Part shown: in pieces, positions 40,080 to 46,980 of the stretch
How positions within the stretch are numbered: the stretch's first letter is position 1
Layout of the letters: the number at the start of each line of letters is the position of its first letter
Source of the DNA: Selaginella moellendorffii
Lineage: Eukaryota; Plantae; Lycopodiophyta
Length of the DNA: 64,000 bases
Direction: 5' to 3'
Assembly (NCBI RefSeq): GCF_000143415.4
Contig: NW_003314265.1
Coordinates: 135,199 to 199,198, forward strand
Program-made: the position numbers and the translations under genes
The notes under the pieces: model-generated
Told to the model about the DNA's origin: nothing
Database searches by the model: none
Seen by the model: the letters and a program-made list of their open reading frames with translations, nothing else

Positions 40080-42423
40080 CTATGAATCTGGCTTGTCCAT
40101 GCATCGCAGCCTGCACCCCCTATTTTCCAGTTGCTCCACCACCCCCGCAGCCAAGGACTGCTTGACATAGGAAAGAAGCTTCACCTTCTTGAGGCTTCCA
40201 CAGTTGAGCAGCGCGTTTCCAAAGCATTCCATGGAGACGTTCTTGAGGTGGACGAGCTTCATGTTTTGCATGCAGCCGAGCTTGGCGAGCGCCATCATCC
40301 CGTTGTTCGTGAGCGGGCAGTAGGACACATTGATCTGGAAGAACGAAACAAAGCTGAGAACTCGAAGAACTAAAGAGATCAACCTGTCGCAGGTCCGGAC
40401 ACAAGTGTTCTAGCGCAAGAAGTCCGGGATCGCCTATTCTCGTGCAGCGTTTGATGTCTAGCTCTACGAGCCGCTTGCATCCCGCCGCGACTTGCGTGAG
40501 GCCGTCGGAAGTGACGAGTGTGCATCCTCGAATCTCTAGCTGGCTGAGCTTGCTGAGGCGAGCTATGGCTGTCATGGACGCGTCCGAGATTCGAGAGCAG
40601 TAGGACAAGTTCAGTACTCTCAGATCCTGGCAGCCGTTGACGACCGAGATCACTCCGGCATCTCCGACAGATCGACACCTGCGCGAGATCAAATTAATCT
40701 CTTTACAAGTAAAAACTTAAGAGAGAGAACCTGTAGAGATCAAGCTCCATAAGCTTGTGACAACCAGCTCCAACGAAGAAAATCCCATAGTCGGAGATGT
40801 TACAAAATGCCAGCTTCAAGACCCTGAGAAGGACACAATTTCCAATCGGCTCAAGCCCTGGAAAAAAGAAGATAAAAAGAAACCACGCGAGTTAAAAACA
40901 AGGAAGAACCACCGGTATGAGAAAACTCACCAGCACCTGTAAGATTGCAATCTGTGACATCGAGTTCCTCGAGAAGATGGCAGCTCTCGAAAACCATAGG
41001 AAGGCTGTTGTCGGTGACCATGAGGGACGACTCCAGCTTGAGGCTCTTGATGGAGGTGCTGCTCCTGGCGATAGACAGGAGCGAGATTTCAGTGACGTCG
41101 AAGCAGCAAGTAAGGTCGAGCTTCTTCAGGAATTTACATGACGTGATAAGTCGATCGATGCGCTTGTCCGTCACCCCTCGGCTTTTGCACAGGCTGAGCT
41201 CCTTGAGTTCTTGGCATCCCGCCGCGACGCGATCGAGCGAGTCGTGCGTAAATTCGCAGCCATCCAGCCGCAGCGTTTGTATGCCGTTCGGTTTCTCAAA
41301 GTCGAGGAAAGCGTCTTCAGTTACCTGGAACGAAGGTAAGAGTTTTGTCTCGCATTTATCTCAGAAAGAATCGGGAAAGAAGAGCAAGAACCTGAGAGCA
41401 ATGGCAGAGATGTAAGGTGAGCAACGTTGGCAATGCTGCAATCCCAACAGAGCTCACGTTTTGACAACGAGACACGTCCAAATCCTTCACACACCGAAAT
41501 GAAATCACCAAAGAGGAATATTGTGCTATAGTCTTACCACAAGAGACTTGCAGTTCTCCTGCAGATACGAAAGAGCTCTATCTCCAACATTGTTGCAGCC
41601 CATGAGATTTAGAGTTCTCAGTGCCTTGAGCTCCGAAACATACTTAACACCTTCGTCCGTTACCTGCAAAAGCAGAGACACTTAGCTAGCACCCTGAAGA
41701 AATGATAGCTTTACAGTACAAAAGCTACTCGAAAGAAAATAAAAAAAGAACGAACAAAAAAAGACATGCCACTACCTCAGTGAAGGAAAGATCAAGGATC
41801 ATTAGCTCCTCGCTGCGAGCAGCGACGAGCTTAATGCCAGCATCAGTGATCGCCACACAGCCTTTGAGGACGAGAGTTTTCAGCCTGTGACATCCTGCTG
41901 CTAAGCTCTCCAATCCCATGTCTGTGACTCTAATGCAGCCAGTGAGCTTAAGCTTTTCTATCCGGTTGAGCCGAGCTAAGCCGAGAAGTCCATCGTCTTC
42001 CACATAAGAACAATAGCTAAGATCCATCTCTACGAGCGAGAGGCAGTGTTGAGATAAGTAGCGCAGGCCAGTGCTCGTGAACCCACAGATCCTGTTAAGA
42101 TAGATGGCTGCCAGCCGCTTCCCAGCTTTATCCGCGACATGGATGAGATTCTCATCCGTGACACCGGCGCAGCACGTCAAGTCGAGCTCCTCCAAGCGCT
42201 CGTATCGATCGAGAGCTTGGGGGAGGAGCTCGGCCCGGAGAAGCTGGAGCCGCCTGCGCACACTACACTCCAATTTGTAGAAAGTTCTACAGACCATCCG
42301 CCAGCTCCTCCGGTCGAAACTGTCGGAGATCTTTCCCAGGACCTCGAGCAGAATGTGCTCGTCGACGAAATCGAGCAGGCAAGCGCTGGGTCTCCGCGAT
42401 CCTGACGAGCTGCTGCAAGCCAT
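40080..42423 (-). CDS. F-box/LRR-repeat protein (FBL3-like), multi-exon
   Basis: F-box-like DEHILLEVLGKISDSFDRRSWRMVCRTF followed by many cysteine-containing LRRs (L.L..C..VTD.GL). Confidence 0.93.
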
Positions 42424-43183
42424 TACCCACTTTCCTCTTTTTTCTTTGCTCGTCAAGACTCTACGAGATAAAGCGAAAAAGGAGAAACGAGAGCGAGCGA
42501 GATGTGAGAGCCATCATGCCTCAGAAGCGATGGAAACTCCAAGGACTCGGAAAAGAGGGATCGGGTACTGGAAGAGTTAAAGAGCCAAGGTAAAATCATC
42601 ACCATCATCCAGAGGGGAGAACGAAAAGATAAAGCCTCTCTCTAATCGTTCGCCCACGCGAATTCAAATGCCTCGGCGGCCAGATGCTACCTAGAGAAGT
42701 ACCTTCCAATCGTACCCACCGGCCCCAGCTCGCGCGCGCTGCGCTCGCCAAGAACCCTAAAAAGCCATCTAGGTGGTGAACACGTGGCGCCAGGACGCGC
42801 TTGATGTGACGTGTACCACATTGACTTGTCCGCGTGGCGTGCGGTTCGGGGTTCGATCCCAGCGGGCCCGGAAAGAGAAAGAGTTTTTGGGGCTCGCGAG
42901 CGTTTTGCCGAGCGTTTTGGAGGGGCGAAATACAGCACTGGGCCGGGCGTTCGCTTCTTAGGTATGTGCCAGTTTTGTTATAGATCTGGGCGATGGTTCC
43001 TCGTGCCAAAAAAACTTCGTCACGGTTCTTCCGCCCAAGAGATCCATCTCATCTCCACGAATTCATGCATTCTTTTCATTCGAGCCTCTCCTTTTCTTTC
43101 TTTCCCTTTTTTTTCGCGGGGCTTAGCGGCCCATCTCCTTTTCTTCCAGGAGGACAAAGGGATCTGCAAGACTGGCTTTTGCG

Positions 43184-45282
43184 ATGGAAATTCACGACGA
43201 GGAGAGAGTGGTGCACTGCTCCTCCATGGATCCAAATGACGTCGACGAGCTCCATCCAAAGGAAGAGAACGACGAGTTCAACGACGAGGAGGTCGCGCAG
43301 TGCGGCAGCAAAGTCGCGCTCTCGGCTCGCAAGCGCGCTCCGTGCACTGCATGGACGGACAAGGAGGCGTTTGCGCTGCTCGACATCTACTACGAGAAGT
43401 GGATCGAGACGAGGAGTGGTGGCTGCACCGGGCTGAGCGATCGCGAGTGGGCCGAGGTTGGCGAGTCGCTCTACCGGCGCTGCGGTGGCACGCTGCGCAC
43501 CGTGCTGCAGCTCAAGAGCAAGATCGACAAGATGAAGCGGAAGTTTAAGAACGAGCAGCTCAAGGCGAGCACCACAGGGATGGGGAATTCTACGTGGGTG
43601 TTCTACGAGAAGATGAGCAGCTTGTTTGGGCTCATGAAGAAGAAGCGAACGACTCCTTTCTTGAAGAGAGCCGCGGATCGAGAGCTGAGCGGAGACGAGC
43701 AGGCCTGCGATGTGGAGGATCTGGAGAGAGTTGGAGGTGGCGTGGTTGCTCTTGGCGATGTTCCTCAGGATGGTGGCTCGGATTCGCTATATAGGCTGCT
43801 CAAACATCATCTTCCACCGGGTGTTTTCAAGGTAAAAAAGAGTTTTGTTCTTCTTTATTGTTTCTCCGTTTTGTCAGATGATAACACTGATCCTAGGAAG
43901 CAAGCAGGATGATCTTGGGATTAAACAATGGGAGTGTCGTAGGAATGCTGCCTTTGCCTCCAGCAGTAATGGCAATGTCTACTGCTGCCGACTTTGACCT
44001 CCAGGTACTTATTTATTTTCTTTTTCAAAGTTTTTCTAGACCAACTTTTATGTGGGTCTTCTTTGAAGGCTTACAGGTTTACTGCTGCCGAGGAAGAGTT
44101 GCGAGCTCCTCGTATTGTTCGTATAGGCGTCATCCAGAACGCCATAGTTCTCCCAACTGATGCTCCTTTTGCGGATCAGAAGCGAGCCATCATGAAGAGA
44201 GTCGGGGATCTGATCGAAGCTGCTGGAACTGCCGGTGTCAACATACTTTGCTTGCAGGTGAAGGGAAGCTTTTTGCATTTTCCATCTCAACACCCATCTT
44301 TCTTCTTTTCTCGATGTAGGAGGCTTGGACGATGCCTTTCGCGTTTTGTACGCGGGAGAAAACATGGTGCGAGTTTGCCGAGAGCGCGGAGGAAGGCACG
44401 TCGACGAAGTTCTTGCAAATGTTCGCTTGCAAGTTTAAGATGGTGATCATCAGCCCCATCCTGGAGCGCGACGAAGTCCACGGTGGAACCTTGTGGAACA
44501 CGGCCGTGGTGATTGGAAACAATGGAAACGTGATTGGAAAGCACAGAAAGGTCAGGCTCTTTCTCTGTTCTCTCTCGTCTCTGAAAATCCTCCTCCATTT
44601 GCTAGAACCATATCCCTCGCGTTGGAGACTTCAACGAGAGCACGTACTACATGGAAGGCAATACGGGCCATCCAGTGTTTGAGACCGCGTATGGAAAGAT
44701 CGCGGTAAACATATGCTACGGGAGGCACCACACTCTCAACTGGCAGGCGTTTGGGATGAACGGAGCGGAGATCGTGTTTAATCCCTCGGCAACAGTGGGT
44801 GACTTGAGCGAGCCAATGTGGCCGATCGAGGTAAGCACGAAAAAACTCTTTTTTCCCTTCATCGCAATCAAAAATCTCTGTTGGATCATCCATCCATTGT
44901 CCAGGCGAGAAACGCTGCAATAGCAAACAGCTACTTCGTGGCCGCGATCAACCGGGTTGGCACCGAGGTTTTCCCGCGAGCTTTCACGTCGGGTGACGGG
45001 AAGCCGGCTCACAAGGGGTTTGGACACTTTTACGGGTCGAGCTATGTGGCGGCCCCGGACTCTTCGTGCACGCCGAGCCTCTCGAGGCTCCAGGACGGGC
45101 TCATGGTCGTGGATGCCGACTTGAATCTGTGCCAGCAAGTCCGAGACAAATGGGGCTTCCGGATGACCGCTCGCTATGATCTGTATGCCAACTTTTTCAA
45201 TGAGTATACAAAGCACGCGTTCAAACCGCAAGTTATCAGCGATCCCCTCCTCCACTCGGGCCTCGAGGCACACAGCCTCTAA
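43184..45282 (+). CDS. PYD3: Chimeric trihelix (Myb/SANT-like) DNA-binding domain fused to beta-ureidopropionase (nitrilase superfamily)
   Basis: Exon 1 (43184-43831) runs without a stop from [17 protein letters not shown]...W.EV...[17 protein letters not shown] into [13 protein letters not shown], the start of PYD3. Later exons carry [32 protein letters not shown] and NICYGRHH (Glu-Lys-Cys triad). Confidence 0.85.
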
Positions 45283-45473
45283 GATCAAATCAAATAAAAC
45301 ATCTTCAAATTATCTAAAAACGTTTCTCAAAGATATCATTTTTAATCCCTTGCAAACAAAACCAATGTAGAAAAGCTATACTTCAAATGATCTAAAGCTT
45401 TTCTCATTTCTAATCCTTCGCAAACAAAACCAACGTAGAAAAGCTGCGTCGCAGGTGTCGCAAAATTTGATTT

Positions 45474-46980
<1,507 letters not shown>

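What the first reader, a model, noticed from the sequence alone, without database searches (positions are those of the whole stretch)
43184..45282. Trihelix DNA-binding domain fused in-frame to beta-ureidopropionase: a candidate enzyme-regulator
Seen: one uninterrupted exon (43184-43831) encodes an acidic N-terminus, a complete ASIL/GT-type trihelix domain, a basic stretch (KMKRKFK, MKKKR), an acidic/Gly linker and then [17 protein letters not shown]. It splices (GT 43832, AG 43896) into [12 protein letters not shown]..., the normal start of PYD3. There is no stop between the two parts and no ATG in the linker; the nearest upstream Mets lie in the trihelix tail. The Glu-Lys-Cys triad is intact. 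Established: PYD3/UPB1 catalyses step 3 of reductive pyrimidine catabolism, yielding beta-alanine. It is normally a stand-alone cytosolic enzyme, and in animal orthologues oligomerisation responds to substrate and product. Inference: the fusion could be a nuclear metabolite-responsive regulator (PutA-like logic) in which ligand-driven oligomerisation tunes DNA binding, or a new chimeric gene created by deletion in a compacting genome.
Basis: partly seen in the sequence, partly recalled or inferred. Interest (0 to 1): 0.9.

Follow-up and report, generated by a model that had tools for sequence, protein, structure and literature searches.

The report
Trihelix DNA-binding domain fused to beta-ureidopropionase
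In the spikemoss Selaginella moellendorffii the gene for the last enzyme of pyrimidine breakdown is really made as one message and one reading frame with a plant transcription-factor DNA-binding domain on its front end, a combination found in no other organism searched and whose purpose is still untested.

Summary
Six GT-AG exons (43184-45282, +) give one 592-aa frame. It contains an acidic N-terminus, a complete Myb_DNA-bind_4 trihelix domain (res 56-147), a basic stretch, a roughly 45-residue low-confidence linker and a full beta-ureidopropionase (bUP/PYD3). The enzyme keeps its catalytic tetrad and both interface histidines. RNA-derived contigs from three independent studies run unbroken from the 5'UTR through the trihelix into PYD3 with the introns removed, and depth is equal over both halves. 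The model is identical to RefSeq XP_002963936.2 of Selaginella moellendorffii; the second haplotype carries the same fusion in the same gene neighbourhood. All 9 nucleotide differences among three alleles in exon 1 are synonymous, so the trihelix half is under purifying selection. Among bUP proteins of 442 aa or more in 5.8 billion clusters, only this species combines PF13837 with PF00795. No searched paper mentions the fusion. The SIP1/ASIL-type trihelix has lost its family's C-terminal coiled coil, and the oligomeric enzyme sits in that position. The ligand-switched, PutA-like regulator idea is untested. Not determined: whether other Selaginella species share the fusion, and whether an unfused PYD3 exists. 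The scan noted another trihelix chimera elsewhere in this genome (s1-344435, unchecked).

The parts
42933..43183 (+). 5' untranslated region as far as the RNA contigs reach. It contains three out-of-frame upstream ATGs (42964, 42993, 43065) and an indel polymorphism at 43126-43130.
   Evidence: Contigs X1 rec 2 and X3 rec 11 start at 42933, X2 rec 7 at 43084 and X5 rec 15 at 43148. uATG list. Haplotype differences.
43184..43831 (+). Exon 1, 216 codons: acidic N-terminus, trihelix domain, basic stretch, linker and the first ~20 residues of bUP homology.
   Evidence: ORF and GT donor. Start context gcgATGG. Continuous RNA contigs. 9 of 9 allelic differences are synonymous.
43184..43333 (+). Acidic N-terminal region with low-confidence structure (res 1-50; 15 Asp/Glu in the first 36 residues).
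   Evidence: Translation. AF2 block-mean pLDDT 49-61 and no secondary structure.
43349..43624 (+). SIP1/ASIL-type trihelix (Myb_DNA-bind_4) domain, res 56-147, with helices at 59-77, 86-100, 107-131 and 141-149.
   Evidence: Pfam E=1.4e-11. W57, W89, Q109 and W138 are invariant across 40 trihelix sequences. AF2 block-mean pLDDT 89-97 for res 61-150 (81 for 51-60). Best fold matches are the Sap1, GT-1 and Zeste DNA-binding domains, but their E-values are not significant.
43634..43669 (+). Basic stretch [12 protein letters not shown] (res 151-162), which looks like a nuclear localisation signal.
   Evidence: Translation. The NLS reading is inference from the KKKR pattern and was not tested.
43670..43759 (+). 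Acidic/Gly-rich flexible linker (res 163-192).
   Evidence: AF2 block-mean pLDDT 48-56 for res 151-200. It aligns only with the variable N-terminal tails of other plant PYD3s.
43760..43831 (+). Start of bUP homology inside exon 1 (res 193-216: [21 protein letters not shown]).
   Evidence: Alignment with plant, algal, animal and bacterial bUPs. PDB matches start at res 201-204.
43832..43896 (+). Intron 1 (65 nt, GT..AG). If retained, the frame stops at 43912, giving a 242-aa trihelix-only product. A minor alternative acceptor lies at 43906.
   Evidence: Joint 43829>43895 is present in all 4 runs. The alternative joint 43829>43906 appears only in X1, at depth 17.7 against 249. ORF 43184-43912.
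43897..44004 (+). Exon 2 (36 codons), bUP N-terminal arm.
44069..44257 (+). Exon 3 (63 codons).
44320..44550 (+). Exon 4 (77 codons). Its first codon is catalytic Glu316 (44320-44322), it contains His369, and its last codon is Lys392 (44548-44550).
   Evidence: CN_hydrolase E=1.8e-12. Residue mapping to human E119, H173 and K196 (residue roles from PMC10741476).
44606..44830 (+). Exon 5 (75 codons), containing Glu403 and the nucleophile Cys429 (44714-44716).
   Evidence: CN_hydrolase E=3.4e-13. PDB 2vhh E=1.1e-42 for this exon alone. Mapping to human E207 and C233.
44905..45282 (+). Exon 6 (125 codons plus stop), containing His503. The only amino-acid difference between the haplotypes, F552L, lies here.

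Best explanation
This is a genuine, expressed and selectively maintained chimeric gene of Selaginella moellendorffii.

Shown: one mRNA and one 592-aa reading frame join two parts. The first is the front of a SIP1/ASIL-clade trihelix protein: an acidic tail, a folded DNA-binding domain and a basic NLS-like stretch. The second is a complete beta-ureidopropionase, starting at its conserved N-terminal arm. A tether of about 45 residues modelled with low confidence connects them. The enzyme half keeps the catalytic tetrad (E316, K392, E403, C429) and the two dimer-dimer interface histidines (H369, H503). It is about 64-67% identical to other plant PYD3s. The trihelix half keeps the family's invariant Trp/Gln positions, and all differences among alleles are synonymous.

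Inferred: the gene arose when an upstream trihelix gene lost its 3' part and was joined in frame to PYD3's first exon. The lost part included the coiled coil that canonical ASIL proteins carry. The protein is an active bUP. Because bUPs work as dimers that stack into larger oligomers, it would display several trihelix domains at once, so the enzyme body would replace the lost coiled coil as the multimerisation module. The most likely mode of action is two modules working side by side, with no proven allosteric link between them: a cytosolic/nuclear enzyme that is also a DNA- or chromatin-binding factor.
For: The gene model is verified and is identical to RefSeq XP_002963936.2. RNA contigs from three independent studies run unbroken from the 5'UTR through the trihelix into PYD3 with the introns they cross removed: X2 rec 7 (43084-44232, introns 1-2), X3 rec 11 (42933-44831, introns 1-4) and X5 rec 15 (43148-45700, all five). 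Separate contigs over the trihelix part and the PYD3 body have near-equal depth: X1 254.8 vs 257.4, X2 45.4 vs 49.1, X3 27.5 vs 23.0. The second haplotype (L081) has the same 592-aa gene between the same neighbours, an F-box LRR gene and TIP49, and differs by 1 aa, which lies in the enzyme half. Nine of 9 allelic differences in exon 1 are synonymous, against about 22% expected by chance. AF2 gives block-mean pLDDT 89-97 for res 61-150 and 48-56 for res 151-200. PDB 2vhh matches at E=8e-165 over res 204-580. Catalytic and interface residues are mapped, with their roles taken from PMC10741476. Substrate- and product-dependent oligomer shifts of bUP are also from PMC10741476.
Against: No protein-level evidence exists for the 592-aa product. 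Assembled contigs cannot exclude a minority of PYD3-only transcripts from an internal start. If transcription starts at 42933, three out-of-frame upstream ATGs would reduce initiation at M1. No orthologue of the trihelix half above 36% identity was found anywhere, so selection is shown only on the shallow time scale of alleles. Whether the genome has a second, unfused PYD3 was not determined. DNA binding, nuclear localisation, oligomeric state and enzyme activity are all untested. The deletion origin is not documented by any unfused relative.
Confidence: 0.62

Rival explanations
1. A metabolite-switched regulator, as in PutA or other 'trigger enzymes'. N-carbamoyl-beta-alanine and beta-alanine shift the bUP oligomer equilibrium. 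That shift changes the valency, and so the DNA affinity, of the attached trihelix domains. Transcription would then be coupled to pyrimidine catabolism, beta-alanine or nitrogen status.
For: A DNA-binding domain and an allosterically oligomerising enzyme sit in one polypeptide. Human bUP oligomer equilibria respond to substrate and product, and the interface His residues needed for this are conserved here as H369 and H503. The trihelix has lost its own coiled coil, so its valency must depend on the enzyme body. The trihelix half is under purifying selection.
Against: There is no evidence of coupling, of target genes or of nuclear localisation. Ligand-dependent oligomerisation has been shown for animal bUP, not for this enzyme. 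The fusion was found in a single species, which fits a recent accident better than an evolved regulatory circuit.
Confidence: 0.15
2. The trihelix half is a passenger. The organism uses the locus only for bUP. Either the N-terminal 190 residues are an inert extension, or bUP alone is produced from an internal start (M144/M151) or by cleavage in the linker.
For: Early JGI models of the two haplotype copies of this gene (EFJ31330.1, 442 aa from M151; EFJ34269.1, 372 aa from M221) are unfused. bUP tolerates diverse N-terminal additions in other lineages: Chara at 580 aa, Adiantum at 485 aa, and dihydropyrimidinase fusions. Upstream out-of-frame ATGs could lower use of M1. The linker has low model confidence, is probably disordered, and could be cleaved.
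Against: Nine of 9 synonymous differences in exon 1 argue against neutral drift. Depth is equal over the trihelix and the PYD3 body, so there is no major internal transcription start. A scanning ribosome would have to skip M1 (gcgATGG), M15, M117 and M133 to reach M144 or M151. The trihelix hallmark residues and fold are intact.
Confidence: 0.18
3. Artefact: an assembly or annotation chimera of two neighbouring genes.
For: Older annotations did not include the trihelix part.
Against: Two independently assembled haplotypes carry the fusion. Spliced RNA contigs from several studies cross the junction. The junction lies inside one exon with no stop codon.
Confidence: 0.02

Closest known systems
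Beta-ureidopropionase / beta-alanine synthase (plant PYD3, human UPB1, Drosophila CG3027; PDB 2vhh, 6ftq, 8pt4)
   Same: There is full-length homology from the N-terminal arm to the C-terminus (E=8e-165 to 2vhh). The CN_hydrolase fold, the catalytic E/K/E/C tetrad and the interface histidines are conserved.
   Different: It carries about 190 extra N-terminal residues containing a folded trihelix domain. Every other bUP of 442 aa or more that was found lacks PF13837.
SIP1-clade trihelix factors (ASIL1, ASIL2, ENAP1/2)
   Same: It has a Myb_DNA-bind_4 domain with the invariant Trp-Trp-Gln-Trp positions, a fourth short helix, a basic helix 3 and an acidic N-terminal flank. The nearest sequence relatives are ASIL/ENAP-like proteins.
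   Different: Identity to any relative is only 24-41%. There is a small insertion (GGCTGLS) in the loop after helix 1, and QLK replaces QCK. The conserved C-terminal coiled coil is absent and an enzyme stands in its place.
Chloroplast RNase J (Arabidopsis At5g63420), the known metallo-beta-lactamase-trihelix chimera
   Same: It is a plant enzyme with a trihelix-type domain in the same polypeptide. There the GT1 domain binds double-stranded nucleic acid without sequence specificity and helps localise the enzyme (PMC4195496; bioRxiv 10.1101/2025.10.15.682605).
   Different: The enzyme is different (a nuclease, whose substrate is itself nucleic acid). The domain belongs to the GT-1 clade and sits at the C-terminus. 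That chimera is conserved across land plants and works in plastids. The fusion here is N-terminal, SIP1-type, joined to a small-molecule amidohydrolase, and seen in one species.
PutA and other bacterial 'trigger enzymes' (DNA-binding domain plus metabolic enzyme)
   Same: The architecture is the same in outline: an N-terminal DNA-binding module on a catabolic enzyme.
   Different: There is no homology. The ligand-dependent switch that defines trigger enzymes has not been tested here.
Dihydropyrimidinase-bUP fusions of ciliates, stramenopiles and other protists
   Same: They are N-terminal fusions onto bUP, which shows the enzyme tolerates large N-terminal partners (PF01979/PF07969 + PF00795, 850-1000 aa).
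   Different: Their partner is the preceding enzyme of the same pathway (a Rosetta-stone fusion), not a DNA-binding domain.

Membership tests
Beta-ureidopropionase (EC 3.5.1.6, nitrilase superfamily) | CN_hydrolase domain | tested here: met
   PF00795 is found in exons 4, 5 and 6 (E=1.8e-12, 3.4e-13, 4e-10). PF00795 is also precomputed for the identical protein P0274.
Beta-ureidopropionase (EC 3.5.1.6, nitrilase superfamily) | Catalytic residues equivalent to human E119, K196, E207 and C233 | tested here: met
   E316, K392, E403 and C429 align with them in 8pt4. Residue roles are taken from PMC10741476.
Beta-ureidopropionase (EC 3.5.1.6, nitrilase superfamily) | bUP-specific N-terminal arm and full-length similarity to solved bUPs, rather than to other nitrilase-family branches | tested here: met
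   2vhh matches at E=7.9e-165 over res 204-580. The next branch, N-carbamoylputrescine amidase, reaches only E=6.9e-24.
Beta-ureidopropionase (EC 3.5.1.6, nitrilase superfamily) | Hydrolysis of N-carbamoyl-beta-alanine | not testable with these tools
   This needs an enzyme assay of the recombinant full-length and ΔN proteins.
Trihelix (Myb/SANT-like, Myb_DNA-bind_4), SIP1/ASIL clade | Pfam PF13837 above the gathering score over the whole profile | tested here: met
   45 bits against a cut-off of 27; profile positions 3-89 of 89; res 56-147.
Trihelix (Myb/SANT-like, Myb_DNA-bind_4), SIP1/ASIL clade | Conserved tryptophans and Gln of the three helices, plus the fourth-helix Trp | tested here: met
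   W57, W89, Q109 and W138 are invariant in a 40-sequence alignment.
Trihelix (Myb/SANT-like, Myb_DNA-bind_4), SIP1/ASIL clade | Helix-loop-helix-loop-helix fold | tested here: met
   AF2 predicts helices at 59-77, 86-100, 107-131 and 141-149 with block-mean pLDDT 89-97 for res 61-150. Foldseek's top matches are the Sap1, GT-1 (2jmw, TM 0.62) and Zeste DNA-binding domains, but with E>0.1, so the fold match alone is weak.
Trihelix (Myb/SANT-like, Myb_DNA-bind_4), SIP1/ASIL clade | C-terminal coiled coil found in canonical ASIL1/ASIL2/ENAP proteins | tested here: not met
   The ASIL-type rows (P0170, P0175, P0190) carry the conserved ...SIRxFAxSIxKLExAKMEMYKDSER... helix. This protein has no counterpart, and bUP follows the linker instead.
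Trihelix (Myb/SANT-like, Myb_DNA-bind_4), SIP1/ASIL clade | Binding to GT-type DNA elements or chromatin; nuclear localisation | not testable with these tools
   This needs EMSA or DAP-seq and GFP localisation.
Trigger enzyme / PutA-like bifunctional regulator | DNA-binding domain and metabolic enzyme in one polypeptide | tested here: met
Trigger enzyme / PutA-like bifunctional regulator | DNA binding switched by the enzyme's substrate or product | not testable with these tools
   Only the prerequisite is shown: the interface residues used in the allosteric oligomerisation of human bUP are conserved.
RNase J-type enzyme-trihelix chimera (At5g63420) | Metallo-beta-lactamase/beta-CASP nuclease with a C-terminal GT-1 domain | tested here: not met
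   There is no MBL domain. The trihelix is N-terminal and SIP1-like. This is an analogue, not a member.

The most novel reading that the evidence does not exclude
The fusion is a eukaryotic 'trigger enzyme'. The substrate- and product-controlled stacking of bUP dimers sets how many trihelix domains are presented together. Pyrimidine-catabolite or beta-alanine levels would then directly control DNA or chromatin binding and transcription, giving a natural, metabolite-gated multivalent transcription factor in a land plant.
Probability: 0.12. Interest if true: 0.85.

Novelty: new variant of a known kind. Interest (0 to 1): 0.5.

Why it matters
Fusions of an enzyme to a transcription-factor domain are rare in eukaryotes. 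They are useful because they hint at direct links between metabolism and gene control. Here the enzyme partner is one whose activity is known, in animals, to be set by ligand-driven assembly of dimers into larger oligomers. The DNA-binding partner has lost its own multimerisation helix. That makes a simple hypothesis directly testable in vitro: does N-carbamoyl-beta-alanine or beta-alanine change DNA binding? If the two halves turn out to work independently, the gene is still a clean, RNA-verified example of a new protein architecture arising by in-frame merger in a compact plant genome. It also shows that a trihelix gene was hidden from family surveys based on the first Selaginella annotation: the two early JGI models retrieved for this gene are unfused and omit the trihelix.

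Tried and rejected
1. phmmer of exon 1 against 1.84 billion representatives gave only 24-40% identical trihelix proteins. None of the top 150 contains a bUP part. The gene's own protein was not returned, presumably because it sits in a cluster represented by an ordinary PYD3. The blank therefore says little about fused relatives.

2. The search for homologous proteins with exon 1 (candidate range 119-378 aa) found nothing.

3. A two-row alignment (a long conifer trihelix protein plus exon 1), used to widen the length window (A1), returned only conifer and angiosperm ASIL/ENAP-like proteins. It was useful for clade assignment but not for finding fusions.

4. Placing exon 1 as an N-terminal overhang on a bacterial bUP row failed in local MAFFT trials and was abandoned.

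5. What worked: a stop-free, 804-aa extended reading of a bacterial bUP locus (L005) with the search restricted to its bUP part. This limited candidates to bUP proteins of 442 aa or more.

6. A mixed alignment of PYD3s and trihelix fragments for a full-length structure prediction (A2) misaligned every trihelix fragment onto the enzyme and was not used. Only exon 1 was modelled.

7. A gene-structure and neighbourhood comparison with the fern Adiantum failed because no DNA was served.

8. Literature searches gave 0 papers for trihelix + ureidopropionase, the two Pfam names together, beta-ureidopropionase + Selaginella, and the six accession numbers.

9. Readings rejected. Assembly chimera is excluded by two haplotypes plus RNA. 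A separate upstream trihelix gene is excluded because there is no stop unless intron 1 is retained. PYD3 starting at exon 2 is excluded because homology starts in exon 1.
Full report
**What is in the sequence**

The region 43184-45282 (+) holds six exons: 43184-43831, 43897-44004, 44069-44257, 44320-44550, 44606-44830 and 44905-45282. All are phase 0 and all are bounded by GT..AG. The introns are 55-74 nt long, AT-richer than the exons, and none is a multiple of three. The joined frame is 592 codons.

Pfam places a complete Myb_DNA-bind_4 domain at residues 56-147 (E=1.4e-11, 45 bits against a cut-off of 27). It places CN_hydrolase in exons 4-6. There is no stop codon between the two parts. 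A stop is reached, at 43912, only if intron 1 is retained.

One detail needs correcting. Homology to beta-ureidopropionase (bUP) does not start at exon 2. It starts inside exon 1 at about residue 193-201 ([21 protein letters not shown]). This is shown by alignments to the solved Drosophila and human enzymes, to plant and algal PYD3s and to bacterial homologues.

**Is it one transcript?**

Assembled contigs of four RNA runs from four studies were laid on 42400-45700. Three contigs cover both halves:

- X2 record 7 covers 43084-44232.
- X3 record 11 covers 42933-44831.
- X5 record 15 covers 43148-45700.

Each runs without a break from upstream of the ATG, through the trihelix and linker, into PYD3. 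Each has every intron it crosses removed, so it derives from spliced RNA and not from DNA.

Where one run gave separate contigs for the two halves, their depths are nearly equal: X1 254.8 against 257.4, X2 45.4 against 49.1, X3 27.5 against 23.0. This argues against a major PYD3-only transcript from an internal start. Contigs cannot exclude a minor one.

A rare alternative acceptor at 43906 would shift the frame (depth 17.7 against 249 in X1). If transcription starts at 42933, the leader holds three out-of-frame upstream ATGs. M1 has a good context (gcgATGG).

**Identity of the organism and the database record**

Ordinary length limits hid the fused protein. I therefore searched with a stop-free 804-aa reading of a bacterial bUP locus, restricted to its bUP part. 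This admits only candidates of 442 aa or more.

Among 153 hits (120 listed), exactly one carries PF13837 together with PF00795. It is P0274, 592 aa, 'beta-ureidopropionase [Selaginella moellendorffii]', XP_002963936.2. It is identical, residue for residue, to my model.

Its 90% cluster holds the other haplotype's copy, XP_002967983.2, which is also 592 aa and differs by one residue (F552L). It also holds two old, unfused JGI models: 372 aa from M221 and 442 aa from M151.

The second haplotype locus (L081) has the same neighbours, an F-box LRR gene upstream and TIP49/RuvBL1 downstream. An assembly chimera is excluded.

The fused model is thus already in RefSeq, but under the enzyme's name only. 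No paper in the searched library mentions the combination or the accessions.

**Is the trihelix half maintained?**

- Between the two haplotypes, exon 1 has 4 substitutions in 648 nt. The 5'UTR has 7 in 251 nt.
- The allele seen in run X5 adds five more differences.
- All nine sites are third-position synonymous changes. About 22% of random changes in this exon would be synonymous.
- The three alleles encode the same exon-1 protein.

This is purifying selection, but only on the shallow time scale of alleles. No relative closer than 36% identity over the whole matched stretch was found for this half, so deeper conservation could not be tested.

**What the two halves look like**

In a 40-sequence alignment with ASIL/ENAP-like trihelix proteins, W57, W89, Q109 and W138 are invariant. 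AlphaFold2 with that alignment gives four helices (59-77, 86-100, 107-131, 141-149) with block-mean pLDDT 89-97 for residues 61-150. Block-mean pLDDT is 49-61 for residues 1-50 and 48-56 for 151-200. The best fold matches are DNA-binding domains (Sap1, Arabidopsis GT-1, Zeste), though with non-significant E-values, as is usual for small helical domains.

Canonical ASIL1/2-type proteins carry a conserved C-terminal coiled coil. This protein does not; the enzyme follows the linker instead.

The enzyme half matches Drosophila bUP at E=8e-165 over residues 204-580. It keeps the residues equivalent to the human catalytic tetrad E119/K196/E207/C233, which here are E316, K392, E403 and C429. It also keeps the dimer-dimer interface histidines H173/H307, here H369 and H503. 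Residue roles are taken from PMC10741476. That paper also documents that substrate and product shift the oligomer equilibrium of human bUP, and that activity requires assembly of dimers into larger oligomers.

**How it most likely works**

Shown: one message, one frame, two intact modules joined by a linker modelled with low confidence, and selection on both halves.

Inferred: an upstream SIP1/ASIL-type gene lost its 3' part and was joined in frame to PYD3's first exon. Other in-frame chimeras have been noted in this compact genome (unchecked notes s1-344435 and s1-337373). The product would be an active bUP whose oligomer presents several trihelix domains, so the enzyme body stands in for the lost coiled coil.

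I rate 'two modules working side by side' as most likely (about 0.6). The ligand-switched, PutA-like regulator comes next at about 0.15. A passenger N-terminus, or a separately produced bUP, is about 0.18. An artefact is about 0.02.

**Comparison with what is known**

Enzyme-trihelix chimeras have a precedent. Land-plant chloroplast RNase J (At5g63420) carries a C-terminal GT-1 domain that binds double-stranded nucleic acid non-specifically and helps localise the enzyme (PMC4195496; bioRxiv 10.1101/2025.10.15.682605).

N-terminal fusions onto bUP also exist. Dihydropyrimidinase-bUP fusions occur in ciliates, stramenopiles and others. The present combination differs from both. It joins a SIP1-type trihelix to the N-terminus of a small-molecule amidohydrolase, and it was seen in one species only. 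I file it as a new variant of a known kind.

**Limits**

- There is no protein-level or functional evidence.
- Conservation in other lycophytes is not determined.
- The presence of a second, unfused PYD3 in this genome is not determined.
- RNA evidence comes from assembled contigs, which show presence but not the absence of minor isoforms.

Noticed in passing
L001-L073 (e.g. L003:1419-2576, L001:1389-2576): Many Myxococcota/Bradymonadales genomes encode a eukaryote-type beta-ureidopropionase. It is 62-66% identical to the Selaginella enzyme over its full length, including the N-terminal SLExxL arm, and 80-87% identical in exon 5. This suggests transfer between eukaryotes and these predatory bacteria.
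   Followed up: partly
proteins P0289, P0290, P0305, P0314, P0319-P0324 and others: Dihydropyrimidinase-bUP fusion proteins (PF01979/PF07969 + PF00795, 850-1000 aa) recur in ciliates, stramenopiles and metagenomic eukaryotes. Chara braunii has a 580-aa bUP with a repeat-rich N-terminal extension that has no Pfam domain.
   Followed up: no
window 45283-45700: RNA contigs X1 rec 5 and X5 rec 15 run from the PYD3 3' end straight into the convergent TIP49/RuvBL1 gene, whose minus-strand ORF ends at 45474. The two genes' 3' ends therefore overlap or abut in transcripts.
   Followed up: no
window 42933-43183: The leader holds three out-of-frame upstream ATGs (42964, 42993, 43065) whose ORFs overlap the main start. 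It also has an indel/SNP cluster at 43126-43130 that differs between haplotypes and breaks RNA contigs.
   Followed up: partly
window 43829-43906: A minor alternative acceptor at 43906 skips 76 nt and shifts the frame. It was seen only in run X1, at about 7% of the main joint.
   Followed up: no
window 43576-43588: The allele in run X5 (organism label C) has four synonymous differences within 13 nt (43576, 43579, 43585, 43588) that neither assembled haplotype has. This may be a third allele or a small conversion tract.
   Followed up: partly
another piece of the same genome (note s1-344435): A first-stage note describes a second trihelix chimera in this genome (EAR-like motif + polyQ + trihelix fused to an MSP1/ATAD1-type AAA+ ATPase). 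Another note describes a fumarase + proteasome-like fusion (s1-337373). I checked neither. Together they suggest in-frame gene mergers may be recurrent in S. moellendorffii.
   Followed up: no
window 41725-42456 (-) and 45474-46932 (-): The flanking genes are an F-box/LRR protein upstream and TIP49/RuvBL1 downstream. Both are syntenic in the second haplotype.
   Followed up: partly
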